Positions 4,590 through 60,886 of a stretch of DNA of 64,000 nucleotides are shown piece by piece. Within the stretch, counting starts at the first letter, position 1. The number at the start of each line of letters is the position of its first letter. The notes beneath the pieces are model-generated. The model ran no database searches. It was not told the DNA's origin and was given only the letters and a program-made list of their open reading frames with translations. A program made the translations under genes and the position numbers. The DNA is from Neoechinorhynchus agilis (Eukaryota > Animalia > Acanthocephala). Where the stretch lies: NCBI GenBank assembly GCA_051530055.1, contig CM121343.1:590389-654388 (forward strand), given 5' to 3'.

Positions 4590-5420
4590 ATGACCTGATT
4601 CGAATTCAAAATCGATATGCCGATGGGAAGAGTCACTACAACGAATCCTTACTAATCTCATAAAAAATTACATATTCAAATTTAGGCTACTGTATACAGC
4701 CTTAGTAGAAAATAGCGAAGCAAGCCATATTGTGGACATTGATAAAAACCCTCTTAGTTCATTTAATATTTAAAAATGTTTTTTGGTAGAATTACGTCAA
4801 TGGAAATAGAAAATTATGTTGTCTTCATAAAGCATAAATTTTCAATTTTATCCAAATCGTTGGCTATTAATGTTTTGAGCTACTGAATTATTTGATAGTT
4901 TCTAACGAGTGGTGCAAGATGAGATTTTAACAATACGCAACTGAATTATAGGCACACAGCTCACCAATTTCGGTCAGGGAAATAATGGTTTGCGCTCATT
5001 GCAGATAAACGTACAGTTATAAGCTTGTACATCCCTCCAGATTCTCAGATACCTCCAGGAGGCGGGATCCCGTCTATAAATTACTGAAATAATTTACTGA
5101 TTTCGGTTAGTCCTAACCTTATCAACAATAGTTCCTTAATTTCACCTGTGGAAGGCATTTAATAAGTGATTCGATTTTTTGAGTGGTATGTTGATCAAGT
5201 GTTCATATACATTTACAATCATTACATGTTCCTTTGTCGTTACTTTGTTGACCCCATTTCTTATGATCTGATTCGAATTTAAAATCGATATGTCGATGGG
5301 AAGAGCTACCACAACGAACCCTTACTAATCTCATAAAAAATTACATATTCAAATTTACGCTACTGTATATTAGGGCCTTAGTAGAAAATAGCGAAGCGGG
5401 TAATATTGCGGACATTGCTA
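4590..5420. repeat. Pair of ~160-bp direct repeats (4590-4745 and 5262-5420)
   Basis: ATGAyCTGATTCGAATTyAAAATCGATATGyCGATGGGAAGAG...CTTACTAATCTCATAAAAAATTACATATTCAAATTT occurs twice. Confidence 0.85.
4940..5075 (-). repeat. Truncated copy of the tRNA-headed hammerhead repeat family (cleavage strand only)
   Basis: ATTCTCAGATACCTCCAGGAGGCGGGA matches the copies at 38051 and 43461. Confidence 0.7.
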
Positions 5421-19283: not shown

Positions 19284-20351
19284 TTATACAGAGGAAAAAT
19301 TGAAGTAATTTATTAGGTTCGATATCTTGGAGGCACAATATTGTGCCTTTATCGAGGTTGTAAAAGTGTTATTTTCTGCACTTGAATTCAATTTTCCGCC
19401 ATAAAAAAGATATGTTATTATTTTGGTCGGTACCCGAGACAAGCACATGAACAATTTCGCGAGAACTTGGGCAAGATTACGCGCCATGCACAATCCATCA
19501 ACTTGATCGTAGCTCTTATCTTCGAAATTGAGATTCGTGTTCCTCGTGTACATGTATAAGAGTTCCTTCCATACGAGTTTGCTTATTGCGTTGAAGTATA
19601 GGAATCGCAAGGTTGATCGCTGAGTCCAATTTCGAAACCATTCTAAATTCTGTATTCCCGTGCGCCTTCAATCTTCCCATTAATTCTACATTCGATGATC
19701 ATGTGCACTCATTCACCGGCATTAAATTTCTCAAAATGCTAGTCAATTTATCGAGAAGTGTAAGATGAGGATTTTTAACCATGCAATGCTGAATTATGGA
19801 CACCCACAGTCGACCGATTTCGACCAGGGAAGCGCCGGCCTGCGCTCAGTGCCCTTTGACCCAAACTAGGATATCTCAGTTTGGGTCAAAGGGTTAAAAA
19901 TTCGTTACCGCCGATGACGCATAACCAGAGGGCGAGATATCGATGAAGTAAGGAAACTCACTGATAAGTCCCGCCTCCTCGGAGGATATTAAAACTTATA
20001 ATTGTACGGTTATAGCCATTGAGAGCAGATCAGCGCTCCCCTGACCGAAATCGGTGGACTGCGGGTGTCCATAATTCAGTCGCATATTGTTAAAATCTCA
20101 TCTTACAAATCTCGAAAAAAAACATGCTGAAGCACGAATAAAAATGTTAAAATACTAGCGAATGTCCTAGCTGTTTTGATATGGTATGCAGAATGTGAGG
20201 CAATGATTGACATAGATTTCAATGGCGACTTATGTATTTTGGCCAATAAGTACATATTCGGTGTTTTCCCATTGCTGGATTGATGTTTTTGGTATATTTC
20301 AGAATGGATCTTACCACGCTTCATCAGCGTTAATAAGGATTGATTAAACAT
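19284..20351 (-). pseudogene. Penelope-type RT remnants split by a fold-back insertion
   Basis: PNMYLLAKIHK (20103-20351) and F.F....Y.QVDGLCM...LA.LFM (19284-19610). Confidence 0.65.
19751..20116. mobile_element. Fold-back element with ~85-bp imperfect terminal inverted repeats enclosing a degenerate hammerhead-family copy
   Basis: 19751-19835 pairs with 20033-20116; internal 16-bp perfect inverted repeat CCCTTTGACCCAAACT; GAAACTCACTGATAAGTCCCGCCTCCTCGGAG inside. Confidence 0.7.
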
Positions 20352-26795: not shown

Positions 26796-29700
26796 ATGTC
26801 TACTATGCGGCAATTTTTGATACTCAGTATCTTGAGCATTTTAATTATTACAAATCAGTCTGCACGAGTGAATAAACGTAAGCCGCCAAGATTCAAGGCA
26901 TTTAGTTTCCTATCGATTCATGAAAAGGAAGGCAATTTGCTGGAGCTGTTAGACCGGATGATATTGATTACATTGACTATGAAGAGGTTTGACCGCTCTG
27001 TCCTATATTTCAGTCCACTCATAATGTCAACTTCTGGAACACAGCCGGAAGATGACATCCAAATTCCAATCGAACCGATTCAAACACCGGAAGCAGGAGA
27101 AAAATCAGGAGTTGTTCCGGTTTCATATTCCATATCTGCAGTGCCAGGACAAACTGGTTCAAGGGGAAATCAGGGACCTCCTGGTGTTCAGGTAGCCGTT
27201 ATTATTCGTTATTACCTCTTTAACCATGATCTATTTGGCAGGGTCCACCTGGCCTCCAGGGATCACGTGGTGAAACTGGAGAACCTGGCCCACCCGTAAG
27301 TTTATGACACTCGACTTAATCTTTCATGACATAAAATCTATAAATTACAGGGTCCACCAGGACCCACTGGACCACACGGCCCACCTGGAATGATGGGAAA
27401 ATCTGGAGACGAAGGTCCACCCGGACAAAGTGGACCTGTAGGACCAGTTGGTCCACCGGTTGGTTGTTTTTGATTTAAGAATTACAGCACGTCAACTATA
27501 TAGGGACCAAGGGGACCGATTGGCGCTGGTGGATTGCCCGGTCCAAAAGGACATCCAGTAAGACTACGTCATGATTATTTAAGATTGTGAGCACTTTGGT
27601 TTAACAGGGATGGCCAGGAGAAGACGGCAGTAAAGGGGATAAAGGTGACAAAGGTGCAACTGGTCAACAGGGTCAACAGGGTTCTATGGGCCAACCTGGA
27701 CTGCAGGCATGATAAAGAAATTTAGTAAAACAAACTATTCGACGCAAACACAGGGTCAAGCCGGAAACCCCGGTGAAAGAGGCAGGAGTGGACCAGTAGG
27801 ACCAACGGGACCACGCGGAGTGGACGGAAACCCGGGAAGCCCGGGACCATCAGGTCCACCTGGTCCCCAAGGTCCCATAGGTCCAACGGGCCAAACTGGC
27901 TTAAAAGGTAACATTTTCTCCATTAGACTCGAGATGCACCATATAAATAGGAGAAAGAGGTAGACGTGGAAGGAAAGGAGCTGTTGGTCCGCGGGGTCAA
28001 AGAGGTGAGCCAGGATCTGCCGGAGAGCAGGGCCCTCCAGGACCGCAGGGTCCACAGGGTTCACAAGGACGAGCGGGCAAAAAAGGACCACAGGTATACG
28101 AGCATCCAAACGTTGCAATAAGGTTAAAGTTGTGTAGGGAGAATCGGGAACGGCTGGTGTACCAGGATTACAAGGAGCAACTGGTCCTCAAGGAGCACCG
28201 GGTGAAACCGGATCTCCCGGACCACGCGGTGAACCTGGGCCCATGGGCAGGCAAGGACAAAAGGGTGAAATTGGTGCAATCGGACAGTCTGGTCCGAGAG
28301 GCGAACGTGGTTACGCTGGCAAACAGGGAGAAGATGGCAGATCAGGCCAAAGGGGTCCAAGAGGTCCAACTGGGCTTCAAGGTCCACCGGGGGAAATGGT
28401 AAATCTTTCTAATCGAAAAATTGTACTTATATTTTTACTAGGGTCCTGCTGGCGCGCCAGGATCAATCGGACTCCCAGGAGTTCCTGGTCCGAAAGGGCG
28501 ACAAGGCGACGTAGGTTCAGCGGGTGCTAGGGGAGAACCGGGCCCACATGGCCAGACTGGAAAACCTGGAAAATCAGGTCGACCAGGAAAAGCAGGCGTA
28601 CCGGGCGACCGAGGTGAGAATTTTTTTCGACCACGAACTTGCACGATGCTTACGGATGCTTAACAGGGGAGACTGGGCCACAGGGAGAAAGAGGACAGCA
28701 AGGAAAAACAGGAGTACAGGGAGAGACAGGTCCAGTCGGCGAACCTGGACCACCTGGCCAACCAGGACCAGTGGGACCGCAGGGTTCTCAAGGATTGCGA
28801 GGTGAAACGGGGGAACCGGGAATTGACGGAATTCCAGGATCCAAGGGAGCGGACGGTGTTACGGGACCAAGAGGACACATAGGAGCTCAGGGTCCGCGTG
28901 GAGAAGGTGGACGAGATGGATCAACGGGTGCCCAAGGTCAAATTGGGGCACCAGGAGCACCTGGGCCTATGGGTTTGCCAGGTCAGGCGGGCCAACAAGG
29001 GCCTACGGGTTCACCTGGAAAGGATGGAAAGCAGGGAATGGATGGAAAACCTGGTCTTCGAGGTTCTACCGGTGAACGTGGCGCACCAGGACCGAAGGGT
29101 GATCAAGGTGACGACGGGCGACAGGGAAAAGTAGGGGAAACAGGACCGCCTGGACCAACAGTGAGTAAAAATGGGTTTCACTTTATATCAAATATAAAAT
29201 AAACTTATAGGGCCCAGTTGGAAAACAAGGTGAACGTGGACCTAGAGGGCCTACTGGTGTTCCGGGTCAACCAGGAACTAAAGGACCTGTCGGTGGAATT
29301 GGAATGACAGGCCCAAAAGTGAGTTTGAAGTATTCATACTACATAAACGTGATGCTCATTGTTATTCGAATTTTAAGGGATCGCGTGGTCAGCGTGGAGA
29401 GCAAGGTCCCGAGGGAAAGGATGGAGAACAAGGCGCTGGGGGAGTTCCCGGTGAACCGGGAACTCAAGGCGAGGCTGGATCTCGAGGTATTTCATAGATC
29501 GAAAAAAAGTTTTGCTACAATTCAAAATTCGAAGGTGAACGTGGAGAGCCTGGAACACCGGGGAAAAAGGGTCCGTCGGGTTCAAAGGGTCCGAGAGGTG
29601 AAAGAGGACTTACGGGATCTCCAGGACCGATTGGTCCACAGGTAGGCCAGTAGTTTGGTATTAATTGTAATCAAATATTCTCAGGGACCGAGAGGCGAAC

Positions 29701-31892
29701 CAGGTTTCGAAGGTCACCAAGGGCAACCTGGACCATCAGGCGAACCTGGAGAGAAGGGCGAAGCAGGAGAGAGGGGACCAGATGGACCAAAAGGAATAGA
29801 TGGAGAACCGGGCCAAGATGGTCTACCTGGAAAACCCGGCATGCCTGGGAGAGAAGGCTTTCAAGGACAAGCTGGAAAATCGGGGTTGCCTGGGAAAAAT
29901 GGTGAACAGGGAGAAAAGGGACCAAAGGGTATTGCTGGATTGAAGGGATTACAGGGAGATACTGGGTCAACTGGCGAGCCAGGTTCTAAGGGCGAACAGG
30001 GCGACAAAGGAGCAAGTGGAGATACAGGGGATGACGGTGAACCAGGACCAGTTGGGCAATTAGGGCCTAAAGGGAAGAAGGGTCCATCAGGTCCTTCGGG
30101 AGAAAGAGGAGCGCCCGGTTATCCTGGAGCAACAGGAAATCCAGGCACTATTGGAAAAGTCGGTACGTAAAATGTTAAGCGGTATTGGGTGCAAGTTACA
30201 AGACTTCTCACAGGTTCGCGGGGAAGAAATGGTGCAAAAGGAACAACGGGCGACCGAGGAGCACCTGGTAGACATGGTAGGCCGGGACAACAAGGCAAAC
30301 CGGGAGAGGCTGGTGCTCGAGGACTTCCTGGGCAAGATGGAAATCCCGGCTCTTCGGGCCTAGCTGGAATACCAGGAAAGCCAGGTCAACGGGGTAAACG
30401 CGGTCCTCAGGGAGAGTCTGGTGAACAAGGTATGCCAGGACAAGTAGGACAGTCCGGTGAACGCGGTGAGACTGGACCTCAAGGAGAACCAGTAAGTTTG
30501 ACGTACGTGTTTCATATTCGTTGACACTTGAGATGTAGGGACGACCTGGAAGGCCAGGAAAACGCGGCGAACAAGGAGAGAGAGGTGACAAAGGTGAAGC
30601 AGGGGATGATGGCTTGAATGGAGCAGTCGGAGCACCTGGAGACAAGGTAAGGGTTGATAGCAAAAAAAATTTATAAAATGACTGTGTCGCTACTATGTAA
30701 CTTAAGGGAGAGAAAGGCGATAAGGGATGGACAGGAGCTCCTGGAATTCCAGGAAAACCGGGCCAAAAAGGACCACCAGGTGAACAAGGCTCGATGGGTC
30801 TTGCTGGTATTCCTGGAGAATCTGGATCAAGCGGGTCACCGGGAGAAGAAGGACCATCCGGTCACAGAGGTCCAAGGGGTCCGCCGGTAAGAGCACTGAA
30901 TATAAGTACATTTCGCCACACAAATTTTTCAGGGTGTCCCAGGAAGAGATGGGATGCCGGGTCCACCCGGTCCAGAAGGCCGACCTGGTCCGCCTGGTCC
31001 GCCTGGACCACCAGGTGAAGGAAGTGGTGGAATGGATGCTGCTGCATTGAGCAGTATTTTGGCAGCGCAGCAGGCTATGAAAGGACCGATAAGTTCTTAT
31101 TCATTTTTGAGACAGTCACAAGAGCGGCCCACTGTAATACCGGATGCCGAGCCGCCTCAACAGGAGTTGGGACATGGCTCAAAGCCACCAGACTTTGACG
31201 AGGATGGAAGTGAATACGACGACGAAGAGGAAGAGGAGGACTTTAAACGGTGGCTACGTGACGCAGTCGCAAATATACTCGTTCAACCGGATGGTACAAA
31301 GCAAAATCCAGCCTTATCATGCCGGCACTTGAAGTTGGCCAAACCTGCAGTTGAAAGTGGATTCTATTGGGTTGATCCAAACCAAGGATTACCGGATGAT
31401 GCCATCCAAGTATATTGTGATTTTGCAGAGGAACGATCAAAAACTTGCGTCAAACCAGTACCCACCACTGAAACACTTGATCATTTGCCGGTATCGCACA
31501 CAGGCAGTGGCAAACAGTGGCTCAATTTGGAATCAGGCAATCAAATTATATCATATGAAGCTCCTAGTGACCAAATTGCAGCTTTACATGAGTTGTCGGA
31601 TCGCGCAGAGCAAAACGTAACATTCCATTGTAGAAACAGTCGCATCGTCGGAGAAAATGAGGGACTTGTATTGTTGGGATGGAATGATGTTTTTGTCACA
31701 AATTCCGATTCAGATTTAACTCTCAAGTACTCAATTGAATCAAACGACTGCAATGGTAATGGGGACGCGCAAGCGATATTGAAGTATAAGACGATCAGAC
31801 CGGAAAGGTTGCCAGTTGTCGATGTTGGAGTTTGGGATTTGGGCAAGGACAAAGACGCATTGGTCAAAGTAGGACTGGCATGTTTCTCTTGA
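26796..31892 (+). CDS. Fibrillar collagen alpha chain with COLFI C-propeptide, 19 exons
   Basis: Signal peptide, continuous Gly-X-Y from 27147 to ~31022 after removing introns, [37 protein letters not shown] motifs. Confidence 0.95.
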
Positions 31893-32419: not shown

Positions 32420-32875
32420 TGTCGATATGTGAGGTACCGGGGAGAATGTGATTGGAATTATTGTTTAGAAGTCTATACCCGCGGTAAATAATTATTTATT
32501 AAAGACGTTCTGCGAACCTCGTCGGGTTTATCATCAGTTTGTTTGTTAGTAAAAGACTCCGACGAGGTTCGCAGAACGTCTTTAATAAATAATCATTTAC
32601 CGCGGATGTAAACTTCTAAACAATAATTACACAAGTCACAGAATTTATTACTACAATACCATATTTCTTAGGTCCAAAGCATTTATCTAATAATAAAGAG
32701 TTGGAGGAACTTTTTCGAACAAGGATATCCATTTAATTGAGAAAAATTTACTCCTAAGAAATATGGTATTGTAGTAATAAATTCTGTGACCTGTGTAATT
32801 ATTGTTTAGAAGTTTACACCCGCGGTAAATGATTATTTATTAAAGACGTTCTGCGAACCTCGTCGGAGTTTTTCA
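32420..32875. repeat. Cluster of three copies of the minimal-hammerhead element in alternating orientation (double fold-back)
   Basis: 32556-32672 is the reverse complement of 32753-32869; 32451-32540 is a further inverted copy. Confidence 0.85.
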
Positions 32876-34830: not shown

Positions 34831-36947
34831 TCAGAACGATTTAGTGTCGTGTTGAGAGTCTCCACCGGATCCGTTCATCGGATGGTTTAGATAATTCAAG
34901 CTACTTGGATGCAGCAATACGGGTGTAATGAGCGGCGAAGATGGCAAACTCGACGATGATGATGATGATATTGGTGTATTAGTAGCAGTGGTAGTAGTCG
35001 TTGTCGTCGCTGTCGTCGTTGATAGTCGTGACATGAGATGTGAGTGATTTGCATAGATAAATAGATTAGCTGTCGCAGCGATCGCCATCGTATCCCCTCT
35101 TGGACTGAATGCACAGTGCATTACTCGTCGATTAAAGTCCGATTCGGTTAGCTTTATTCGACGCCGCCGGTACGTTTCGCTACTGTTATTATTGGTACTA
35201 TTAGACGAGTAGCTGACCGCATTAGGAGGTGTTAAAGTGGCGACATTGGCGTTCATTGGACCAGAAGTAAGGCTGACGGAGGGACTAGTTCCGCCGTTTC
35301 GTTTGTCAGTAAGCAGTTGATTGGCGTAACTTGCATTATCAGCTGATGCTTCATAGATGGATACGTTCTGAGTATTTCGATTAATACACGAAAATAAGTG
35401 ACCGTAAGATCCGGTGACGATGTGTCGATCATCCGGACTAAACGAACAATCGAACTTATCGAATATAGAATCGTTCTCGTATAGAGTGCATAGCAGTGGT
35501 TTAACGTGCTCGTGTACATTGTATATCTCAAGCGGACGTGAGTTTTGCCTAGAATCCCAGACTTTGACGGTCAGATAATCTCGTGTTGCCATCAGAAAAT
35601 CGTGACCTTGTACGTTAAGAGGCGATATGCGCACATTTTAGATTTTTTAAGTGCCACACCTCCGCGCACGTCGCCGGGTTTACCGAATTTTACATCGCTC
35701 ATAGAGCCAATAATCTCAGAGAAAAATCCTCTTGGGAACCTAGTGTCATCGGGTTGTTCAAAAGCAACGAATGTCCTATCACATAAAGCCTGAGTTCGCA
35801 TATCACACAGACGTAGAATCCCTTTGCTGCTTGAAAAGGCAAACAAATGGGAATAGTGTGGGTGGCAGGTTGAAGCTGTAATGACCTCTGTCAGATTCTC
35901 CATATTCCTCGGTTTCAAATCCACGATCTGGAATAACTCATTATCATAGTCGAGATGCCAACAATTTACCCGTAGATCGTCACTGCTCAAAAATAACTCA
36001 CCATCCGCAAACAAACTAATCGAATTTAGGTGGTACATGTGACCATTTTTGTAAACTACTTTCAATACAGGACTAACGTGTGGCTCTTGTAGTCTTCGCA
36101 ATTTAGGCAATTCCAAGAAACCGCCATGGCCTAGCTGCTCAGCGGCAAATTCACCTTCGGCAACGAAGCGACGTTCACGTAATCGCCAAAGCTTTATCGT
36201 TTTATCATTGCAAGTCAAAATCGATTCGTGTTGACGGTATCCTTTCAAAAACTCAATATTGTTCACTCGTTCGTCAATCTCCAGGCTTTTTAGATAGTCA
36301 AACTCAGGCTCATGAGCCGTGAATGAACAGTAAACGCTATAATAATCCATCGTTGGAGGGTATGGAGACAAAGAATCATCGATGGCACTCATTTCTACTT
36401 CAATTCGCTTAAACAACACGATACGACCTAACTTATCACCGGTTGCAATCATGTCCCCGCATTCATTGAACTGAACCGTTGATATTGAGTCACCTAAAGG
36501 TACAAATGGCGATTGGTGCGAGGAGGTACCGGGGAATGTGATTGGAATTATTGTTTAGAACTGATGATGAACCCGACGAGGTTCGAAACGTTTTAATTCC
36601 AACCTAAAGGTTAGTTGTTTTTTTTAACGGAAAGCAAACTAATGGAAAAATAACGTCAAAAAAAGTAAAATCGGCCATTTGGAATCGTTAAACAAGTAAC
36701 GATCGCCGCCGATATTTGATTGACCAAAATCGCCAAAAAAAATTTAATTGCTTTAATGTACTTTTTAGTCAAAAATGAAAAAATTACCTTCATTACAGTC
36801 GGATCCTGGCGTAACTCCTTTGAGTATTGAAAGGTACCACTGAACCTCTACGCAGAAAAGTTCATAAATAAATCCGTTCATAAGAATCGAACCTTCATTA
36901 CTATGACCAGCGGTGGCAACATCCCCACCAACTATAGACGAATACAT
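34831..36947 (-). CDS. PPP2R2: PP2A regulatory subunit B55 (PPP2R2/twins family); introns 36787-36494 and ~35680-35605; start codon uncertain
   Basis: ATGDK.GR.V.F, HEPEFDYLKSLEI.E, H.YH.NSIS, FFSEII.S.SDVKF, TRDYLTVKVWD, LYEND.IFDKF.C motifs. Confidence 0.95.
36502..36601 (+). mobile_element. 100-bp insertion with intact-core minimal hammerhead, flanked by a 10-bp direct repeat
   Basis: ACCTAAAGGT at 36492-36501 and 36602-36611; CUGAUGA-U-GAACC-CGACGA-GGUUC-GAAA-CGUU at 36561-36592. Confidence 0.8.
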
Positions 36948-37639
36948 TGCGACCGAACAGTCTCTCGTAGTTTTCTATCGAAACAACTCTACGTGTATGG
37001 AATTGCGCACATGTACGCGCGCGCGAAGGGCGTAAACAAACGTAGAAGCGAAGACGAGGCTCGCGCTCTCTCAAACTCACCCGAATTAAAGATTCCGGTC
37101 CCGTATTCGCTCTCTTATCTATCATTCAACGATTCTTCCAGAACCATACACGCGTTCAACTGTACGGCTTTGCGAAAATAATCGATCGGAAATAATGATA
37201 AATCTAGCGATTTTAGGATTTTTAAATTTTCTTTAATACAAATTTGAACTTTTGTACTTCCAATTCAAATGATTAACGCTCCCATTCATCGGCGCTGGGA
37301 AAAATGCTGGTCGCATTGCCCCGGTGCACCGCAATGCTTGCTTTTTTGCGCCAAGAACGACGTCGATCTTGGCTCTCCAGTCGCCGCGTTGATAACCAAT
37401 AATCTGATCTTTTGCACTCAAACCAGCGATGAGTCTAATCACTGAAATTCAATTTTAATCAATCCGAGCAGAAATACTTTAAAAATAGAATTAAGAGGTA
37501 TTTTAACGAAATATTTCGAAAGAGAGAGCCTCATCTTATCCAGATCATCTAAAATGTTCTATTTTTAAGTGTTTAAAACGTCCCTTCGCTAGGCTTTGTC
37601 CTTTTTTAGGCATAAAGCCAACTGATAGCTTCGATCAGG

Positions 37640-38640
37640 CAAGTAATTGAATCACTCCGGATTCTCAAATACCTCCCGAGGAGGCGGAGCTCATTAGAGA
37701 GTTTCCTCTTCCCTTTAGCGGGGTATTGCGTCCCCTTTGTGCGTTATCGGTCTTAATGGATTTTTAACCTTTTTTGACCCTGAAACAGGGATTCGGGGCT
37801 CCAACTCGGCACAAATACGGAATGTACAACAAAATCAGCCAGTTTTTAATTTTGGAACAATTATTTAATTATTTTATCTCTATATCTGGCTAGCCGGTTA
37901 CTTTTTATTACGCGTTGAAGTGAGGCCTTTTTCAAGGCTGATAATTTTGTTCCTTGGGCACACATCCCACCGACATGGTTCAGGGAAGCGCTTAAAGTCA
38001 CTTAATACCCCGAAGCACACGGCTATGAGTTTTGTACGCATTAATCCGGATTCTCAGATACCTCCCGAGGAGGCGGGACTTTTCAGAGAGTTTCCTCTTC
38101 CCTTCGGCGGGGTATTGCGTCCCCTTTGTGCGTTATCGGTCTTAATGGATTTTGAACCTTTTTGACCCTGAAACAAGGATTCGGGGCTCCAGCTCGGCAC
38201 AAATACGGAATGTACAACAAAATCAGCCAGTTTTTAATTTTGGAACAATTATTGAATTATTTTCTCTCTATATCTGGCTAGCCGGTTACTTTTTATTACG
38301 TGTTGAAGTGAGGCCTTTTTCTAGGCTGATAATTTTGTTCCTTGGGCACACATCCCACCGACATCGTTCAAGGAAGCGCATAAAATCACTTAATACCCCG
38401 AAGCACACGGCTATGAGTTTTGTACGCATTAATCCGGATTCCGGGATTCATCAGAGAGTTTCCTCTTCCCTTCGGCGGGGTATTGCATCCCCTTTGTGCG
38501 TTATCGGTCTTAATGGATTTTGAACCTCTTTTGACCCTGAAACAAGGATTCAGAGCTCCAACTTTGCACAATACGGAATATGCAACAAGATCAGGGTAAG
38601 TGTTGAACTCTTTAATGGCAAGCCGGTTATATTGATTTTT
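37640..38640 (-). repeat. Tandem array (~389 bp, ~2.6 copies) of the tRNA-headed hammerhead repeat, GCAA subfamily
   Basis: ATTCTCArATACCTCCCGAGG at 37661 and 38050; third copy with internal deletion at ~38430; A/B-box-like motifs at 38189-38201 and 38147-38158. Confidence 0.85.
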
Positions 38641-38699
38641 CTTGGATACAATAGAAAATGACTAGAACATTTTAGAAGTCTGCGTCTTTTAATACCTTA

Positions 38700-38820
38700 C
38701 AAACTGATGATGAAATTGACGAGGTTCGCAGAACATCTTTATCAGGCAAAATTATTTACCAATTGAAGACCTAAACTAATTTTGATTACATCACCCGGTA
38801 CTTCCTCACATGTCGACATT
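38700..38820. repeat. Diverged copy of the minimal-hammerhead short element
   Basis: AAACTGATGATGAAATTGACGAGGTTCGCAGAAC plus inverted leader CCGGTACTTCCTCACATGTCGACATTTT. Confidence 0.7.
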
Positions 38821-39479: not shown

Positions 39480-40740
39480 TAAGGTTGTAGATTACAATTA
39501 CTAATTATCTACGACTATTTCCTTTATATTTTTTAAATCTTTTCTAATTGGCTGAAAAGTTTGAGCTCATGAACGTCGATTTGGGTTTAAAGCATTCGTT
39601 AGTAATATTCTTAAGAATTAAATTTCGTTATTTAAGCTGTTTTTTGGTTGTAGATTACAATTAAACACTTCGTAATTATCTAGGACTATTTCCTTTATAT
39701 TTTTAAATCTTTTCTAATTGGCTGAAAAGTTTGAGCTCATGAACGTCGATTTGAGTTTAAAGCATTCGTTAGTAATATTCTTAAGAATTAAATTTCGTTA
39801 TTTAAGCTGTTTTTTGGGTTATAAATTGCAATTAAACACTCCGTAATTATCTAGGACTATTTCCTTTATATTTTTAAATCTTTTCTAATTGGCTGAAAAG
39901 TTTGAGCTCATGAACGCCAATTTGTGTTTAAAGTATTCGTTAGTAATATTCTTAAGAATTAAATTTCGTTATTTAAGCCGTTTTTGGGTTGTAAATTACA
40001 ATTAAACACGTCCTAATTATCTACGATTATTTCCTTTATATTTTTATATCTTTTCTAATTGGCCGAGAAGTTTGAGCTCACGTACAACTCATGAACGTCG
40101 ATTTGTGCTTAAAGTATTCGTTATTAATATTCTTAAGAATTAAATTTCGTTATTTAAGCCGTTTTGGGTTGTAGATTACAATTAAAAAGGTCGTAATTAT
40201 CTACGACTATTTCCTTTATATTTTTTAAATCTTTTCTAATTGGCCGAGAAGTTTGAGCTCATGAACGTCGATTTGTGTTTAAAGTATTCGTTAGTAATAT
40301 TCTTAAGAATTAAATTTCGTTATTTAAGCCGTTTTTGGGTTATAAATTGCAATTAAGCACGTCCTAATTATCTAGGACTGTTTCCTTTATATTTTTTAAA
40401 TCTTTTCTAATTGGCTGAAAAGTTTGAGCTCATGAACGTCGATTTGTGGTTAAAGTATTCGTTATTAATTTTCTTAAGAATTAAATTTCGTTATTTAAGC
40501 CGTTTTTGGGTTGTAAATTGCAATTAAAAGCGTCAAAAGTTTGAGCTCACGTACAACTCATGAACGCCAATTTGTGTTTAAAGCATTCGTTATTAATATT
40601 CTTAAGAATAAAATTTCGTTATTTAAGCCGTTTTGGGTTATAAAGTCGTAATTATCTACGATTATTTCCTTTATATTTTTATATCTAATCTCATTGGCTG
40701 AAAAGTTTGAGCTCATGAACGTCGATTTGTGTTCGTTATT
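39480..40740. repeat. ~170-bp AT-rich tandem repeat, ~7.5 copies
   Basis: TTTCTAATTGGC at 39541, 39711, 39882, 40052, 40233 and 40404. Confidence 0.95.
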
Positions 40741-43000: not shown

Positions 43001-43463
43001 GAACAACTCTGAACTCGAGTATTCATAAGGACCCAAAGGTACATGGGTTCTATTCTTTGTTATTTTAACAAATAAACGTGTTATTATTATGGGATCGGTT
43101 GAAGCGACAAAATTATGCCGCCGAGATGTGTTGAAGATGCAAAATTTTTTATAATTGCGTGAGAAATGATTGTGCCAATTCTAAATGGAATGAAAAACGA
43201 TTTATGAGTTTTTCAAAGAATTGAAATGGTCTAGGAATTTCGAGAGATGGAAATCTCTTTGAGTACTTGTTGGCTTTGGGAAATTTATGGGCACAAAAGC
43301 CTAAAAGATGGCTTCTTAATTTAAATGATAGATCATCATTAAATTTTAGTTTGGCCCTTCTTTTCCGGCTTATTTTTTTTAGGCACAAATTCAAACCATC
43401 AGAGAAGTGATATAACCACAGTCTCTAATGCACGGTTAAAAAGTTTGTATATTCCTCCGGATT

Positions 43464-43530
43464 CTCAGATATCTCCGAGGAGGCGGGACTCATCAGTGAG
43501 TCTCCTCCCTTCAGCGAGGTATTTCGTCCC
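43464..43530 (-). ncRNA. Strand-permuted hammerhead ribozyme candidate
   Basis: GGGAC-GAAA-UACCUC ... CUCA-CUGAUGA-GUCCC ... GAGAUAU-C-UGAG; predicted cleavage between 43468 and 43467. Confidence 0.6.
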
Positions 43531-43847
43531 CCTTTGGCTGTGCGTCATTGGCGGTAACGGATTCGGACCAGTTGATCCTAACTGGGATCTGTAGCATTAG
43601 TCCACTTGACAACCTCGACACAACTACGGAATGTACAAACTCAGTCAGTTTTTAGCGGAGGGTGAGCGCCGTATTCTATTTTAAGCTTTTTACTGGCAAG
43701 CCGCGTTGTTTCATATCATCATTAAATTTTAGTTTGTCCCTTTTTGTCCGGCTTGTTTTTCTAGGCATAAATTCAAACCATCAGAGAAGTGATATAACCA
43801 CATAGCCTCTAATGCACGGTTAAAAAGTTTGTATATTCCTCCGGATT

Positions 43848-43913
43848 CTCAGATATCTCCGAGGAGACGGGACTCATCAGTGAGTTTCCTCCCTTCAGCG
43901 AGGTATTTCGCCC
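43848..43913 (-). ncRNA. Strand-permuted hammerhead ribozyme candidate (second copy)
   Basis: GGGC-GAAA-UACCUC ... CUCA-CUGAUGA-GUCC ... GAGAUAU-C-UGAG. Confidence 0.55.
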
Positions 43914-44558
43914 TCCTTTGGTTGTACGTCATCGGCGATCGTACGCTCGAACCCGTTGGCCCTTAACTTGGATCTGGGGCATTAGTCCACTGGACCAGCT
44001 CGTGACAGCTATGGAATGTACAAACTCAGCCAATTTTTCGGCGCAGAGTGAGCGCTGTATTCTATTTTAAGTTTTTTACTGGCAAGCCGGTTTGTTTCAT
44101 GTCGCTTCTGGTGAGAGTTTTTAAAAACCTTAATTGGGATTCACAATTTTCTCGGAGCAATTTTTGTTGGTAAGTGCGGATAAAACATTATCTCAATAAG
44201 ATAACTCTATGATGCCCTGAATAATTTCTCTCGATCATTATTGGATAATTCGAGTTCTTTTTTTAGCATTTGAATCACAGGTGGCAGGCGAGTTGATGAA
44301 ACTTAATGGGAGCAAATGATTTTGCCAAAAGTACTTGGAGGAAGGGAACAATGAGTTGTACAGTTGAACGCAAATGGGAATTCGTCATGCTGTGCAAGTC
44401 CAAAAGGAATGTGGAGACGGCAAGTAAGTGTGCATGTGACTAAATAGGTGAAGCGAATAAGGCATGTCTTACTTTCATCATCACGACCCTGCCTCTTTTG
44501 GACTAGAGAACGTTTGCTCAGGCTAAAGAAGGTTCAAATACCTCAAAAATCGACCACA

Positions 44559-49554: not shown

Positions 49555-52500
49555 TTATAAACAATTGTCATACTTTCCGTCAGATTCATAATCCTTTTCT
49601 GTTTCATCCTCATCGATGGTAGGAAAAGGAGCAGGTGGATTATTAACCTTATCATCCACGCCAACGACGCTGACGCATGCTTTATGATGTGATCCTCGGT
49701 TCGGTAGTGGTGATGGATCCACTTCCGGACTTTGATCAGATAACCGCTGGTCGGACACATGCGATCCCATCCATGATTCTAGAGCACTATCTAGTGAATT
49801 TGCATTATCCTGCTGATCACCGATCATCTTCAGTTTCGCCATTGCTAAAATTATAGAGTACATACGGTTAATATTTTCAAACTCCACTCAGTGGCTACAC
49901 ACATAACTGATTGGTAAGTGGTCGAAATATCTTTAAGGTGACAGGGTCCTGCCCTCCTTGTAAAAGTTTCAAGGCTTCATTAAGTCCTTTTCCCCTAAGA
50001 GATATTCCATTAATTGCAAGAATTCTATCTCCAATGTGAATGGCATTCGTCCTATAATCATAACGCATACGAGGAAATCAAAGACTAGAAAATACTGACC
50101 TATCAACCAATCCACCACTTGACAATCCCGATACAACGACGGGATCAAAAGGTTCATCAGGCGCTGAAATGGTTATACCAAGTGGTCCACCCTGCCTTTG
50201 AATTTCAACCGTATACGTCACTCCCTGATCATTAAGATTGTCATCTATAATAAGGTATTTTTCGTATTGATTTCTCCACACAATCATTAGAATACCAGCA
50301 AAATATTCGTCCTTTCTAAGCTTCAGTCGCACAATCTCGCCGCAGCCGATGCTGGTTAATATATTGTGAATTTCACTGACCGGCATACCAAGCACTGAAT
50401 GTTGATCAATTGCTAATAATCGATCACCGAGGTTGATCATTCCGCTCCTGATCGTGGATTAGTGTTCGCTTAAAAAAGAGAGGCAATTATACCTATGAGC
50501 AATACTTCCTTTCCTGACATCCGCAATCATTGGTGCTTCATCTGCCTGAGCGTTCTTAGGATCTAATTATTGGGTTCACGTATCTCTCTTTACCAATTTC
50601 CAATCAATACCTACATATCATATTTAGACCGAGGTCGGAAGCCTTCTTTATTAATTTAACTTGGAAGACGCCTGATGATAAAGAAACGGACTCTACAAAC
50701 GTGAACAGCTCATGGGACGACTCACATCAGTAGCCGGAACTCACCTGCAACATCGAACTCAATTTCCAGGTTCATACGGGAACCTGATTCTTTTATGATT
50801 GATCGTGCATTGTCCAGACTTAAACCGCCAAGTCGTTGCCCGTTCACAGCGGTTACGCGATCACCAGCTTGAATAGAACAGCATCTTCTCAATGGATTTG
50901 ACTTTTAACTTTACAATAACAATAAATGAGCGTAAAAATCTACACATTCCACAGTCACACGACCACTAGAGGTCTATCGTTTGTTCTAGATCTTACTAAG
51001 CCGATTGGAGAAACTCAGCGTAGCTTTAAAAAGTTGAAACCATATACATATTCTAAAGGCACAATTGAAAAGAATAAAATTGATTCTAAACATTTTACAT
51101 ATTAGTAAATATTATAGCAGAAAATCACTATATTGTAAGGCATTAGCTGCCGCGCAGCTCGTAGTCTTGATATTCGAGAATTTGTTAAATTCTAAATAGG
51201 TCATTCTATTGTAAGGCATTTGTTGCAGAGATGAATAAAGGAATAGATCGAAATTATGAGTTTTGGCAAAAATCGAAAATTTTACGGCGATGCAGTCAAA
51301 AAAATTCAACACTACAACTTAGTATTAATCTTTTTTTGCGATCACTAAAAAGCATTAGTATTAAAAGGGTTGTATATTTAAACTTCACGAGGAAGGGGGA
51401 ATCTGACAAATCGGATCAACAATGGTTAACCACCATATTTAATAAAGGGAATCCCAACAAAATTGAATAAAAAGTCGACTAACTAAAGTAGTGTGTGTTA
51501 AATTTAAAGCGAACAACAATTATATTAAAAGAGTGTTTTTCAAACGGGAACCAAAAATCGGTTAGTATTAATCTTTTTTTGAGATCACTAAAAAGCATTA
51601 GTATTAAAAGGGTTGTATATTTAAACTTCACGAGGAAGGGGGAATCTGACAAATCGGATCAACAATGGTTAACCACCATATTTAATAAAGGGAATCCCAA
51701 CAAAATTGAATAAAGTCGACTAACTAAAGTAGTGTGTGTTAAATTTAAAGCGAACAACAATTATATTAAAAGAGTGTTTTTCAAACGGGAACCAAAAATC
51801 GGTTAGTATTAATCTTTTTTTGAGATCACTAAAAAGCATTAGTATTAAAAGGGTTGTATATTTAAACTTCACGAGGAAGGGGGAATCTGACAAATCGGAT
51901 CAACAATGGTTAACCACCATATTTAATAAAGGGAATCCCAACAAAATTGAATAAAAAGTCGACTAACTAAAGTAGTGTGTGTTAAATTTAAAGCGAACAA
52001 CAATTATATTAAAAGAGTGTTTTCAAATGGGAACCATAAGTCGGTTCATACAAATTCGATGGTCAATGATATGAGTGCGCAATGTCGGTTTTTTTGACGC
52101 TCACAAAGCAAAGTTGAACTTACGATGCGGCAGGTCCATCGGGATCCACATATCCGACGATAGGTGCGCTAGTCAGAGCACCAGTCAATGGACATGAGCC
52201 TTGTAAAGTAAATCCGAAGTTTCCGGTGTTGTCGACTTGCAAACATATATTTGCAGTTTCGGTGTGGCATATTTGGGTGTTTAAAATCAGCGATTGAGGA
52301 GTAACGGCATAAGGCGATGCTAGGACAACAGAAGGTCTGAAACAAACCACTTTCGTGCAAATTATAGGCAGGGTACGTGAAGCGGAAAGGATTATTATAT
52401 CAGTGTATAAGATATTTAGAGAGAGAGCAACTCACTGAAACGCATGCTTCATGCATCACGACCGAGCACAGTGAGTGTTGTAACGGGGTTCATTACCAAA

Positions 52501-56793: not shown

Positions 56794-57504
56794 AATACGA
56801 GATCCTTTATAGTCCGTGTCCTGATTCCAAAATCATACAATATTTAAAGGCGTATTGAAATTATAATTTTATATATTTAAGATACGCCACACTAAAATAA
56901 TACAAGTATTTCTGACTGTCTGTGAAAATTAATTGAATCTAAAGTTTCTAAAAAGTATTTATTGCGACCAATTATGAAAAGCAAGAATAAAATTGGTGAT
57001 TAAGAAACGTTAAAAACCCACAGAATTTTGTTCAATGCGTATAAACTCTTAAGCCGAGCGGAAACATACTATTAGGTTTGAAATATTATCTAAAAATTGT
57101 AGACTTAACATGAAATCAAAAAGCTCTTCCAAGTAAAACTCCAAAAAGCAAATCTGAAGTTTTAGTTTCATATTCAAAAAACCGGTGATTTCATCCCAAA
57201 CTGGTTGTTTTGGCTCGTTTATAAAAATTTATTTTCGGTATTCGTATACAGAAAATGCACAAAAAACGTGAAGAAAACTCTTCAGTTTACATTAGGATAT
57301 TTCTACATAAAACGAATACCTTCGCATTATTAGAAAACCTGATCAAACGGAAACCAGCAAGTTACAAAAGCAATCGAAGTCATTTCAGATTAGAATTATG
57401 GTTCTAAATTAAAGAAATTGAAGATATTCGCGAAATCAAAATCTTAAGGAAAAGGGCGAATTAAAACGAAAAAGTATTTTTTGACAGATATAGCACAACC
57501 CCCA

Positions 57505-58545
57505 CCAGATTTCAATTTACTAATTTAAAAACCGATATTCCACGTCGGATAATTCCGGCATTTCTCCAAGGTTTGTCATTATTTGTAAAGGAAATTACAA
57601 GTTCAAACCATGACAATCCTTGGAGAAATGTCGGAAATAAATTAGTCACTGTCGTTTAAATTACTATTTTCCCAAAATAAATGATTTCTTTTATACGTTG
57701 ACTGTATTTTCAACATGAAAATTATTGTTATCGAAAACGATATTGATTTTCCTTAGCTGAAACATTTAAAATGATTGTTTTAAAGAAATCGATTTCTGTC
57801 GATCCCGAGAAATACAAAAAGTATTATGCCTATCTTTTTTATCGCAAACTGCTTTTAATTTCTACCTTCAGTAAATCTTATCCGTCTAAATGAACTTTTA
57901 ATCATTACAATAAAAACGTTTGGCGTTATTTGCCCAAATGAATTTTATCGGCCGAAAAGATATTTCCTTTTGGTAGTTATACCACCTCCCCTTGGAGATT
58001 TGAATTGACTAATTTAAAAACCGATATTCCACGTCGGATAATTCCGGCATTTCTCCAAGGTTTGTCATTATTTGTAAAGGAAATTACAAGTTCAAACCAT
58101 GACAATCCTTGGAGAAATGTCGGAAATAAATTAGTCACTGTCGTTTAAATTACTATTTTCCCAAAATAAATGATTTCTTTTATACGTTGACTGTATTTTC
58201 AACATGAAAATTATTGTTATCGAAAACGATATTGATTTTCCTTAGCTGAAACATTTAAAATGATTGTTTTAAAGAAATCGATTTCTGTCGATCCCGAGAA
58301 ATACAAAAAGTATTATGCCTATCTTTTTTATCGCAAACTGCTTTTAATTTCTACCTTCAGTAAATCTTATCCGTCTAAATGAACTTTTAATCATTACAAT
58401 AAAAACGTTTGGCGTTATTTGCCCAAATGAATTTTATCGGCCGAAAAGATATTTCCTTTTGGTAGTTATACCACCTCCCCTTACAGATTTGAATTGACTA
58501 ATTTAAAAACCGATATTCCACGTCGGATAATTCCGGCATTTATCT
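57505..58545. repeat. 489-bp tandem duplication (2.1 copies) containing a ~27-bp hairpin
   Basis: CCGATATTCC at 57532, 58021 and 58510; TTCCGGCATTTCTCCAAGG / CCTTGGAGAAATGTCGGAA. Confidence 0.93.
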
Positions 58546-59722: not shown

Positions 59723-60886
59723 TCAGTGATCAATACTGGTATCTCCTTGACAGAATATGCTTTCCTCTTCACAGTTCGCGTCATCGTCATTTGGACCAGC
59801 AGCCGGATCAGGTATAAAGAGCACAAGTGATCGCTCAGTGGTTACTAGGGTCCCGTCCGAGGCTAAAGATGGCTCTCTGGATGAGTTTACAATCTCTATA
59901 TGCCCAGTGGTTCCCAACAGCCTTCGTACATAATTGATTAGACATTCAATGTGATGGATGCGTAGATGGGATTCGGCGATCGGATCGGTCGCATTTTTCC
60001 GTATGTGCGTTGATTCGATTCGGTTCAATAGGTGATAGAGGGCAGTTACAACATCAGGTTCAAAATGACCACTTATACTGTTCATTGTCAACTGTGAAAA
60101 AGAGCCTCAAAGCACACAAAAAGCCGAGAATGAACAGTTTAGATGAATGAGCTTTAACGCCAATAGGATCCATGCATCCAGATCTCTAGGGAAAGCCAAA
60201 GCACAATAGGAAGAAGAGAATCGTCTTTGTTGAGACCTAGCATGTCGCAGAAATCCCAATAAAAGCAATAAACGGTTCCTAATTGATCCTGTCGGTTGAA
60301 GGACAAACGGTTTTCGTTTTGCTACACTCAATGGAAGAGCGGCGGCGTTCGGGCACCTAGTCACAGCTTCGTCTTCGGCAAATTGATGATCCAATTGAAG
60401 GCACACAAACGCGGACATGGATGCATAATGAGCCGCGCTGCCACAATTCGACACATTCGGATATTCGACGTATCTGAGTGTAGTGCCAATCTCCCATGCA
60501 CTTTTCGAGAATCTATCGAGCCGCCCGGATAAAATCTCAACCGTAAAATAAAATATGGCTCGGGCGCATTCATTCTCGAGATATCTCTCTTCGCTGCATG
60601 GTATATCCAAATTACCTTCGCCGTATTTAAGAACAATATGGAGAAGAAGAAGAGCACGGTTATATGCAACCGCCTGATAATATTCAAGGCATCCCGAAAA
60701 GTAATGGCCAATCAAATCAGCCAATTCGTCAATTGGTTCACTTTCCATCATATCAGGAAAATCCTTGAGAGCCTTGCCGGTTGGCTGTTGCGTATTTTTA
60801 AGTGCTCCCGAAAATAATGAGTTCGGCAGAATGAAATCTTGATGATTTGCCGAATAAGTATCGACATCGTCCTCCGATTTCACCAT
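59723..60886 (-). CDS. Hypothetical helical protein, at least 2 exons (short GT-AG intron near 60140-60097)
   Basis: 259-aa and 122-aa ORFs joinable by a ~43-nt intron; family not recognised. Confidence 0.55.

What the first reader, a model, noticed from the sequence alone, without database searches (positions are those of the whole stretch)
43464..43530. Hammerhead ribozyme with its three strands in reversed, pseudoknotted order
Seen (minus strand): GGGAC-GAAA-UACCUC [linker GCUGAAGGGAGGAGA] CUCA-CUGAUGA-GUCCC [linker GCCUCCUCG] GAGAUAU-C-UGAG. All core bases are present. Stem II is GGGAC/GUCCC, stem I is CUCA/UGAG, and stem III is AUACCUC/GAG(G/A)UAU. Stem III has one C-A mismatch here and is perfect against the GGAGGUAU strand of the 5040 and 38050 copies. 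Established: hammerhead types I-III are nested permutations of one cyclic strand order. Here the cyclic order is reversed, so a monomer cannot fold as a nested structure. Inference: the two linkers run antiparallel and are complementary (GGGAGG/CCUCCU), so they could form a fourth helix in a ~67-nt double pseudoknot. Alternatively, activity may need two tandem units or two molecules. Competing local hairpins (ACUCA-CUGA-UGAGU; CCUCC/GGAGG) could make it a switch. I do not recall this topology being described, but could not check.
Basis: partly seen in the sequence, partly recalled or inferred. Interest (0 to 1): 0.9.

Follow-up and report, generated by a model that had tools for sequence, protein, structure and literature searches.

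The report
Reverse-order hammerhead ribozyme in a worm retroelement
A very common ~385-base mobile repeat in the genome of the fish-parasitic worm Neoechinorhynchus agilis carries all the parts of a hammerhead self-cutting RNA in the rare "type GCS" order. That order was first described in 2023 from one doubtful bacterial example, so the shape is not new, but this would be its first animal case and first repeat-family case.

Summary
It reads GGGAC-GAAA-UACCUC / 15 nt / CUCA-CUGAUGA-GUCCC / 9 nt / GAGAUAU-C-UGAG.

The reversed block order is real and cannot fold without pseudoknots. It is not undescribed. Eckert et al. (NAR 2023, PMC10085705) defined the non-circular hammerhead permutations SGC, CSG and GCS. 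This is type GCS, which they knew from one Caballeronia sequence that cleaves slowly and has no covariation support.

The motif is the best-conserved module of a ~385-nt non-autonomous retroelement. I found 11 copies in 84 kb of Neoechinorhynchus agilis (Acanthocephala). They occur as tandem, head-to-head and 5'-truncated copies, a pattern typical of Penelope-like elements.

The majority consensus is a perfect GCS hammerhead with 16 Watson-Crick pairs, and it folds about as well as the published active GCS-1. Only 2 of 11 copies keep a full core. Both have a C·A mismatch in stem III and strong competing hairpins.

Covariation is uninformative and there are no cleavage data. My verdict: probably a genuine permuted hammerhead family. 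This copy is weak or dead, and it is a new member of a known kind.

The parts
43516..43530 (-). G block: stem II 3' strand GGGAC, core GAA, then A15.1 plus the stem III 5' strand UACCUC.
   Evidence: GAAA is also present in independent copies F1_B, H1 and H4.
43501..43515 (-). Linker 1 (GCUGAAGGGAGGAGA). [quoted passage not shown] GGGAGG can pair with linker 2.
   Evidence: Pairing counts are (helices 3 and 4: 87% of cells paired, no compensatory change).
43485..43500 (-). C block: stem I 5' strand CUCA, core CUGAUGA, stem II 5' strand GUCCC.
43476..43484 (-). Linker 2 (GCCUCCUCG). [quoted passage not shown]
43464..43475 (-). S block: stem III 3' strand GAGAUAU (A16.4 mismatched with C15.4), C17 at 43468, and stem I 3' strand UGAG. 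The predicted cut is 43468|43467.
   Evidence: The family consensus has G at 16.4.
43848..43914 (-). Second GCS motif with a complete core, one repeat unit (384 nt) upstream. Its stem II strand is AGGGC (4 pairs, one G·U). It has the same stem III mismatch.
43332..44100 (-). Tandem array of two repeat units (386 + 383 nt) of subfamily F1. Each unit carries one GCS motif.
37560..38648 (-). Related array of about 2.6 units (subfamily F2). All three units have GCAA. Their C cores read CUGAAAA, CUGAUGA (with a compensated A-U at 10.1/11.1) and CUAAUGA. One unit lacks the S block.
19765..20111 (+). Solo decayed copy (GAGA, CUGAUAA, S block deleted), preceded by an inverted 5'-truncated copy of the element's 3' end at 19765-19856.
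   Evidence: (I5).
4917..5075 (-). 5'-truncated copy that starts inside the C block and has an intact S block, GAGGUAU-C-UGAG.

Best explanation
This is a hammerhead ribozyme motif in the non-circularly permuted 'type GCS' order (GAAA block, then CUGAUGA block, then cleavage-site block). It is the most conserved module of an abundant ~385-nt non-coding retroelement of the acanthocephalan Neoechinorhynchus agilis. The element's insertion patterns resemble those of Penelope-like elements and non-LTR retrozymes.

Inferred mechanism:
- The 5' GGGAC pairs with GUCCC 36 nt downstream (stem II).
- The site strand then pairs with both arms left in that loop: GAGGUAU with AUACCUC (stem III) and UGAG with CUCA (stem I).
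- This rebuilds the normal hammerhead core as a double pseudoknot.
- C17 is cut by in-line attack of its 2'-OH, giving a 2',3'-cyclic phosphate and a 5'-OH at 43468|43467.

What is shown: the sequence anatomy, the family context, and published precedent that a GCS arrangement can cleave.

What is inferred: that the founder or master copies were active.

The copy in the finding keeps every core base. It carries a subfamily-level G16.4-to-A change that breaks stem III, and it is predicted to prefer other hairpins. It is most likely a weak or dead genomic copy of a once-active ribozyme.
For: - Exact sequence and blocks.
- A compact descriptor match is rare in shuffles, 0.01 per window, against two real hits.
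- There are 11 copies in 84 kb of one genome: 7 in the window, 3 in L003 and 1 more in L004.
- Their majority consensus is GGGAC-GAAA-UACCUC / CUCA-CUGAUGA-GUCCC / GAGGUAU-C-UGAG. It has all core bases and 16 Watson-Crick pairs, so it is more hammerhead-like than the copy that drew attention.
- The motif region is the best-conserved part between subfamilies: 17-23 of 25 columns identical, against 8-12 of 25 in most of the rest.
- 5'-truncated copies keep the 3' end, so the RNA intermediate has the polarity of the hammerhead strand.
- Solo copies such as H1 carry all three blocks, so for them only the intra-unit fold is available.
- Precedent: a GCS sequence with much shorter linkers (4 and 2 nt) cleaves at 0.014 per min.
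- In the same nested-ensemble test, the consensus 67-mer shows stem II at about 0.4 and stem III at about 0.55-0.6. That equals or exceeds the experimentally active GCS-1, which shows 0-0.05 and about 0.5.
- One compensatory change occurs in stem II (C-G to U-A in F2_D).
Against: - There is no statistical covariation: 86.9% of cells are paired against 86.7% in shuffles.
- Three substitutions in stems are uncompensated. A16.4 is in F1 and H3, U2.1 is in F2 and H3, and C15.6 is in F2. The first two are shared by independent loci.
- Only 2 of 11 copies keep a complete core. GCAA is shared by a whole array, and G8 is hit twice independently.
- For the present copy, the hammerhead helices have <=0.02 probability and competing hairpins reach -22.4 kcal/mol, against about -12 kcal/mol for the three-strand junction.
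- Stem I has only 4 pairs.
- No Rfam hammerhead model matches, although this is expected for this block order.
- Insertion termini do not coincide with the predicted cut site.
- There are no RNA or cleavage data.
- All copies come from one genome.
Confidence: 0.5

Rival explanations
1. An inactive fossil. A canonical hammerhead-bearing element was rearranged, for example by duplication plus deletions. The three blocks are still recognisable in the family consensus, but the GCS arrangement never cleaved. The region is conserved for another reason, such as recognition by the reverse transcriptase, promoter function or RNA stability.
For: - Uncompensated stem substitutions are shared by independent loci.
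- Core mutations occur in 9 of 11 copies.
- There is no covariation.
- Alternative hairpins dominate the predicted ensemble of present copies. One of them, GGGG/CCYC around GAAA, is strengthened by the F2 U-to-C change.
- Element termini are unrelated to the cut site.
Against: - The common ancestor of subfamilies that differ by more than 50% elsewhere still had every core base and 16 Watson-Crick pairs.
- A GCS arrangement has been shown to cleave.
- The consensus folds as well as that active example.
Confidence: 0.22
2. An inter-unit, nested type-I-like hammerhead. It would form only in transcripts of tandem units. The C block of unit n pairs with the G and S blocks of unit n+1. The ~338-nt rest of the unit is an insertion in stem II, and the next C block sits in the stem III loop. 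No pseudoknot is needed.
For: Two of the loci are tandem arrays with 384-388-nt spacing. The base pairs are the same and the topology is nested. Penelope-like insertions commonly make partial tandems.
Against: - Solo and head-to-head copies carry all three blocks within 70 nt.
- The G and C blocks of one unit are 20 nt apart against 338 nt for the inter-unit pair, so local pairing should win during transcription (inference).
- The inter-unit helices have <=0.001 probability in the dimer ensemble, no better than the intra-unit ones.
- No known hammerhead has a 338-nt insertion in stem II plus a second core strand in the stem III loop (my knowledge).
Confidence: 0.1
3. A chance resemblance. A GGAGG/CCUCC-rich structured segment of a repeat happens to contain CUGAUGA and GAAA next to complementary arms.
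For: The loose descriptor is expected about once per 6 Mb of random sequence, so a whole genome holds many such hits. One unrelated 140-nt hit occurs in this window at 21014-21153. ACUCA-CUGA-UGAGU is itself a hairpin.
Against: A consensus-level match (5+7+4 Watson-Crick pairs, 13 core bases, 67 nt) is expected about 2e-7 times per 64 kb (plus my arithmetic). It improves rather than degrades on going from one copy to the family consensus. It lies in the kind of repeat that usually carries hammerheads.
Confidence: 0.1

Closest known systems
Type-GCS hammerhead ribozyme (GCS-1, Caballeronia peredens; Eckert et al., NAR 2023, PMC10085705)
   Same: The 5'-to-3' block order is the same: GAAA block, CUGAnGA block, site block. 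All core bases are present, and stems I, II and III cross one another as a double pseudoknot. The cut is predicted after H17.
   Different: - GCS-1 is a single bacterial sequence of 51 nt. It has GC-rich stems of 7, 4 and 6 pairs and linkers of only 4 and 2 nt.
- Here the stems are 4, 5 and 7 pairs (3+3 in this copy). The linkers are 15 and 9 nt and can pair with each other.
- The host is an animal.
- The motif sits in a multi-copy retroelement.
Type-SGC (HRIMA-1) and type-CSG hammerheads (same paper)
   Same: They have the same reversed cyclic order. In a tandem or circular RNA the three are rotations of one another. A helix outside the core ties stems I and II together, and the linker-linker helix here could play that role.
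   Different: In SGC, the strand leaving stem I joins stem II through about 3 nt. Here that connection is the ~317-nt rest of the repeat unit. SGC and CSG come from soil, spruce and freshwater metatranscriptomes or metagenomes, and SGC occurs next to hairpin ribozymes. They have covariation support, which this family lacks.
Non-LTR retrozymes and hammerheads of Penelope-like elements (Cervera & de la Pena 2014, 2020; Li et al. 2026 preprint)
   Same: These are short (170-400 bp), low-GC, non-coding repeats in tandem arrays in invertebrate genomes, each carrying a hammerhead. Partial tandems and inverted 5'-truncated copies occur as in Penelope-like insertions.
   Different: Those elements carry compact nested type I hammerheads. 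This one has no type I motif anywhere in the unit. Neither circular RNA nor homology to a Penelope-like element could be checked.
Naiad Penelope-like elements of acanthocephalans (Craig et al. 2021, PMC8557442)
   Same: Naiads make up 7.8% of the genome of the acanthocephalan Pomphorhynchus laevis. They 'lack canonical HHR', yet some carry the two core halves with the second half 'on either side'. That is the pattern a permuted hammerhead would give.
   Different: No Naiad sequence was available to compare, so the link is only a lead.
Schistosoma Sm-alpha, a SINE-like repeat with a hammerhead (my knowledge)
   Same: It is a ~330-nt repeat in a parasitic worm, with a tRNA-like B box upstream of a hammerhead whose stem II is GUCC/GGAC.
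   Different: Sm-alpha has a canonical type I hammerhead. The comparison is from memory and was not tested here.

Membership tests
Hammerhead ribozyme (any type) | Core bases C3 U4 G5 A6 N7 G8 A9, G12 A13 A14, the A15.1-U16.1 pair, and H17 not G. | tested here: met
   All are present at 43464-43530 and at 43848-43914, and in the 10-copy consensus.
Hammerhead ribozyme (any type) | Three helices directly abutting the core. | tested here: met
   Stem II has 5 pairs and stem I has 4. Stem III is 3+3 pairs with a C·A mismatch in this copy and 7 pairs in the consensus.
Hammerhead ribozyme (any type) | Covariation that supports the helices. | tested here: inconclusive
   There is one compensatory pair in stem II. 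Paired cells are 86.9% against 86.7% in shuffles. The copies are few, related and decaying.
Hammerhead ribozyme (any type) | Site-specific self-cleavage after H17. | not testable with these tools
   This needs in vitro transcription or RNA-end mapping.
Hammerhead ribozyme (any type) | A tertiary contact that brings stems I and II together. | tested here: inconclusive
   The linker helix GGGAGG/CCUCCU would cap the distal ends of stems I and II. It is 87% paired across copies with no compensatory change. 3D feasibility was not modelled.
Rfam hammerhead families (types I, II, III, HH9, HH10) | A score at or above the gathering threshold of a nested covariance model. | tested here: not met
   There is no hammerhead hit even at E<=10 on a 96-nt slice. 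This is expected because the block order cannot be aligned to a nested model.
Type-GCS permuted hammerhead (Eckert et al. 2023) | Blocks in the order G, C, S, each uninterrupted. | tested here: met
   using the definitions.
Type-GCS permuted hammerhead (Eckert et al. 2023) | Insertions between blocks are short or fold on themselves, so that the core can assemble. | tested here: inconclusive
   The linkers are 15 and 9 nt, against 4 and 2 nt in GCS-1. They are long enough by my distance estimate. They also form competing hairpins.
Non-LTR retrozyme | Tandem repeats of about 170-400 bp with GC below 50%. | tested here: met
   Units are 383-388 nt, in arrays of 2 and about 2.6 units. GC is about 0.42.
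Non-LTR retrozyme | A type I hammerhead in each unit. | tested here: not met
   The order is GCS. No type I motif was found by descriptor or by Rfam.
Non-LTR retrozyme | Unit-length circular RNA in vivo. | not testable with these tools
   No transcriptome was available.
Penelope-like-element-dependent non-autonomous element | Partial tandems plus an adjacent inverted 5'-truncated copy, with a fixed 3' end and variable 5' ends. | tested here: met
   Window 19765-19856 is inverted against 19857-20111. L003 5008-5239 lies head-to-head with 5267-5562. 3' ends fall at model positions 352-385 in every copy (most at 368-385), and 5' ends fall at positions 2-302.
Penelope-like-element-dependent non-autonomous element | Sequence homology to the pseudo-LTR or 3' end of an autonomous Penelope-like element in the same genome. 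| not testable with these tools
   No reverse-transcriptase-bearing element is in the 84 kb available.

The most novel reading that the evidence does not exclude
The founder of this acanthocephalan repeat family was, and some master copies may still be, an active type-GCS hammerhead. That would be the first GCS hammerhead backed by a whole sequence family. It would also be the first non-circularly permuted ribozyme in a eukaryotic genome or retroelement. Its two linkers may form the helix that clamps stems I and II. It would further suggest that retroelements reported to 'lack canonical hammerheads', such as the Naiad Penelope-like elements that dominate acanthocephalan genomes, carry permuted hammerheads that nested descriptors cannot see.
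Probability: 0.4. Interest if true: 0.75.

Novelty: new member of a known kind. Interest (0 to 1): 0.58.

Why it matters
Non-circular permutation of an RNA fold has been shown only for hammerheads. Of the three reversed orders, GCS rests on one bacterial sequence whose authors called its biological relevance unclear.

A multi-copy animal family with a perfect GCS consensus would give that type its first evolutionary backing. It would move permuted ribozymes from environmental RNA into an animal genome. It would also show that standard searches (Rfam models and nested RNAMotif descriptors) miss ribozymes in retroelements.

It makes one puzzle directly testable: why some Penelope-like clades and their dependants seem to have no hammerhead.

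If the motif turns out to be inactive, it is still a clean example of how a conserved repeat module can mimic a ribozyme.

Tried and rejected
- **Rfam.** I searched the whole window at gathering scores, then 1 kb and 96 nt at E<=10. There was no hammerhead or any other credible family.
- **tRNA scan.** ARAGORN found no tRNA, despite a B-box-like GGTTCGAATCC upstream of the motif.
- **Canonical hammerhead in the unit.** I looked for a nested type I, II or III hammerhead and found none. The only other descriptor hits (21014-21153, 20885-21023, 57177-57288) are 110-140 nt long, have minimal stems, and are at the rate expected by chance. A GGGAC-AAAC string about 130 nt downstream of the upstream unit's C block (about 43750, subfamily F1 copy B) lacks G12 and has no site strand, so I rejected it.
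- **Public collections.** The IMG/VR pattern scan gave 0 hits. The single metagenome scan gave one hit, L001, which is an acidic coding repeat and a false positive.
- **Antisense ORFs as handles to other copies.** The word-index search with the 49-aa ORF found nothing. The exhaustive search with the 81-aa ORF found P0216, which led to L003 and L004 and to the host's name.
- **Walking along the chromosome.** A look-up of window ORF 60107-60886 was not on record.
- **Whole-unit folds.** Linear, circular and dimer folds gave no rod-like structure and no support for either the intra-unit or the inter-unit hammerhead helices in the present F1 copies.
- **Later literature.** I found no later paper on GCS, SGC or CSG hammerheads in eukaryotes.

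Full report
**1. Observation**

The minus strand of 43530-43464 reads GGGAC GAAA UACCUC | GCUGAAGGGAGGAGA | CUCA CUGAUGA GUCCC | GCCUCCUCG | GAGAUAU C UGAG, exactly as reported.

- Every invariant hammerhead base is present.
- Stem II (GGGAC/GUCCC) has 5 pairs and stem I (CUCA/UGAG) has 4.
- Stem III (AUACCUC/GAGAUAU) has 3+3 pairs around a C·A mismatch.
- C17 is base 43468.
- The three strands occur in the order GAAA strand, CUGAUGA strand, site strand. Each stem therefore crosses the other two, and a monomer has no nested fold.

A general descriptor that accepts any block order finds just two compact hits in the window, this one and its tandem neighbour at 43914-43848. The same descriptor hits 0.01 times per dinucleotide-shuffled window.

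**2. The topology is already published**

- They divide the hammerhead into blocks C (CUGAnGA), G (GAAA) and S (site).
- Types I, II and III are CGS, GSC and SCG. The three reversed orders are SGC, CSG and GCS.
- SGC has many examples, with covariation, mutational support and cleavage rates. CSG has two tested sequences.
- GCS rests on one sequence from Caballeronia peredens. It cleaves at 0.014 per min, has no covariation, and has 'unclear' biological significance.

The order here is G-C-S, so the architecture is their type GCS.

I rebuilt GCS-1 from their oligonucleotides. Its linkers are 4 and 2 nt, far tighter than the 15 and 9 nt here, so the geometry is not an obstacle in principle.

I found no later paper reporting any reversed-order hammerhead in a eukaryote.

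**3. What the motif sits in**

The motif lies in a ~385-nt repeat.

- Two units form a tandem array at 43332-44100.
- A diverged subfamily forms about 2.6 units at 37560-38648.
- Decayed solo copies lie at 19765-20111 and 4917-5075.

The host is an animal. Its genes include a septin, a fibrillar collagen and a PP2A B55 subunit. The septin ORF maps to NCBI assembly GCA_051530055.1, chromosome CM121343.1.

An exhaustive protein search with an antisense ORF of the repeat returned one real relative, P0216. NCBI names it a hypothetical protein of Neoechinorhynchus agilis, an acanthocephalan. It is a spurious gene model laid over another copy of the repeat on chromosome CM121341.1.

That locus (L003, extended as L004) holds four more copies with the motif region, plus a 3' fragment:

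- H1 and H2, a head-to-head pair.
- H3, which is 5'-truncated.
- H4, which has an internal deletion.

This makes 11 copies in 84 kb, so the family is very abundant.

- Copies share a fixed 3' end (profile positions 352-385, most at 368-385) and have variable 5' ends. This is the signature of target-primed reverse transcription.
- It also shows that the RNA intermediate has the polarity of the hammerhead strand.
- Partial tandems and adjacent inverted 5'-truncated copies are the insertion pattern described for Penelope-like elements.
- Animal non-LTR retrozymes, which are short tandem repeats with type I hammerheads, are now thought to be non-autonomous dependants of such elements.

**4. Evidence that the motif is more than one lucky copy**

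- Between subfamilies, the motif region and its immediate flanks are 68-92% identical, while most of the rest of the unit is 32-48% identical.
- The majority consensus of the ten copies in alignment A3 (H4 was found later and is not in it) is GGGAC-GAAA-UACCUC / CUCA-CUGAUGA-GUCCC / GAGGUAU-C-UGAG. It has all core bases, and stems of 5, 7 and 4 pairs that are all Watson-Crick.
- The consensus is therefore a better hammerhead than the copy that was noticed. A chance resemblance in a single copy would predict the opposite.
- Scaling the shuffle rate by the extra pairs gives roughly 1e-4 per window with G·U allowed and about 2e-7 for all-Watson-Crick (my arithmetic).
- I applied the same nested-ensemble calculation to the experimentally active GCS-1 and to the consensus 67-mer. 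GCS-1 gives stem III about 0.5 and stem II 0-0.05. The consensus gives stem III about 0.55-0.6 and stem II about 0.4.

**5. Evidence against activity, especially for this copy**

- Only F1_A (the finding) and F1_B keep a full core.
- The F2 array shares GCAA, and its units have CUGAAAA, CUAAUGA or a lost S block.
- The solo copy has GAGA and CUGAUAA. H1 and H2 have CUGAUUA. Others lack blocks through deletion or truncation.
- Pair counting on a hand-registered alignment gives 86.9% paired cells against 86.7% in shuffles. There is one compensatory change, C-G to U-A at 11.1/10.1 in F2_D. Covariation therefore says nothing either way.
- Three stem substitutions are uncompensated: A16.4 in F1 and H3, U2.1 in F2 and H3, and C15.6 in F2. 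The first two are shared by independent loci.
- For F1_A the minimum-energy fold is three competing hairpins at -22.4 kcal/mol. These include ACUCA-CUGA-UGAGU, and CUCGGA-GAUA-UCUGAG, which buries the cut site.
- The three-strand junction is only about -12 kcal/mol, and the hammerhead helices have probability <=0.02.
- Element termini are not at the predicted cut site. The same is true of canonical hammerheads in Penelope-like elements, whose role is still unclear.

**6. Mechanism and rivals**

The best reading (0.5) is a type-GCS hammerhead module that was active in the family's founder and perhaps still is in master copies.

- Stem II closes a 36-nt loop that presents both substrate-binding arms.
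- The downstream site strand pairs with them.
- The cut leaves ...GAGRUAUC with a 2',3'-cyclic phosphate, and a 5'-OH on UGAG.
- The linker helix GGGAGG/CCUCCU would cap the distal ends of stems I and II. That is the role of the extra helix in the SGC and CSG types.
- By my distance estimate, it can coexist with a full stem III only if it folds back or stem III frays. It may equally be an 'off' state.

The rivals are:

- An inactive rearranged fossil conserved for another reason (0.22).
- A nested inter-unit hammerhead that forms only in tandem transcripts (0.10). Solo copies carrying all three blocks, and the 20-nt against 338-nt separation, both disfavour it.
- Chance (0.10).

**7. Comparison and verdict**

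It works like a hammerhead and meets the sequence-level definition of type GCS.

- It fails the definition of a retrozyme on one point, because it has no type I motif.
- It fails every Rfam hammerhead model, as it must.
- It differs from GCS-1 in host, copy number, stem lengths and its long, mutually complementary linkers.
- Craig et al. remark that Naiad elements, which dominate the genome of another acanthocephalan, lack canonical hammerheads yet sometimes carry the two core halves with the second 'on either side'. This is a lead worth following. I could not test it.

Novelty: a new member of a known but very thinly populated kind. Interest is moderate to high. The reader's 'undescribed topology' claim is wrong. 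A family-backed, animal-genome GCS hammerhead would still matter to ribozyme and transposon specialists, and it is cheap to test.

Noticed in passing
L003 5001-5395 (+), which is L004 10001-10395: The NCBI gene model KAL7677239.1 ('hypothetical protein ACOME3_003479', 124 aa, with a 20-nt 'intron') is an antisense translation of this repeat, so it is almost certainly a spurious annotation. I reproduced it exactly by splicing out a 20-nt GT..AG segment.
   Followed up: yes
window 43560-43590 (-); L003 5362-5372 (+): A B-box-like GGTTCGAATCC (GAGTTCGAATCC in L003; degenerate in the window copies) lies about 40 nt upstream of the G block, inside a long hairpin. This hints at a tRNA-derived, pol III-type SINE origin like Schistosoma Sm-alpha. 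ARAGORN calls no tRNA. Subfamily F1 alone has a T5 run 25 nt after the S block.
   Followed up: partly
window 37560-37660 (-): The last unit of the F2 array switches, just after the S block, to a 3' tail that resembles subfamily F1 rather than the internal F2 units. The elements are therefore mosaic or recombinant.
   Followed up: no
window 61077-64000: This is a 113-nt satellite with at least 24 units. Identity repeats every fifth unit (100/89/90/72/70%), which indicates a ~565-nt higher-order repeat. The array runs off the end of the window.
   Followed up: no
window 8199-11225: This is a complex satellite built from 44-, 72- and 116-nt sub-repeats. It has a strong strand bias (GC skew -0.32).
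   Followed up: no
window 14938-16425; 39500-40733; 1-906; 51228-52023; 57479-58544: There are five more tandem arrays, with periods of 198, about 170, 222, 241 and 489 nt. Some are 98-100% identical between units. The window is unusually rich in satellites.
   Followed up: no
window 5830-6557 and 7329-8056: This is a 728-nt inverted repeat, 99% complementary, with a 771-nt spacer. It is a young foldback element or a transposon with long terminal inverted repeats.
   Followed up: no
window 21517-21605, 32453-32873, 38678-38741: This is a family of short inverted-repeat (MITE-like) sequences. Copies are 83-98% alike and lie at three places in the window.
   Followed up: no
window 26757-31892 (+): This is a fibrillar collagen gene, with Gly-X-Y exons and a C-terminal propeptide domain. 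It accounts for the GC-rich (0.54), purine-skewed stretch. Septin (23988-24827) and PP2A B55 (34831-36452, minus strand) lie nearby. The septin ORF's closest relatives by identity among the top E-value hits are the septin of Pomphorhynchus laevis (55%) and rotifer septins (about 49-53%); a few unnamed metagenome sequences reach similar identity over less of the query.
   Followed up: partly
window 21014-21153 (+): This is a 140-nt match to the loose hammerhead descriptor in type II order with minimal 4-pair stems. Its length and the shuffle rate (0.16 per window for spans up to 150 nt) mark it as a chance hit.
   Followed up: partly
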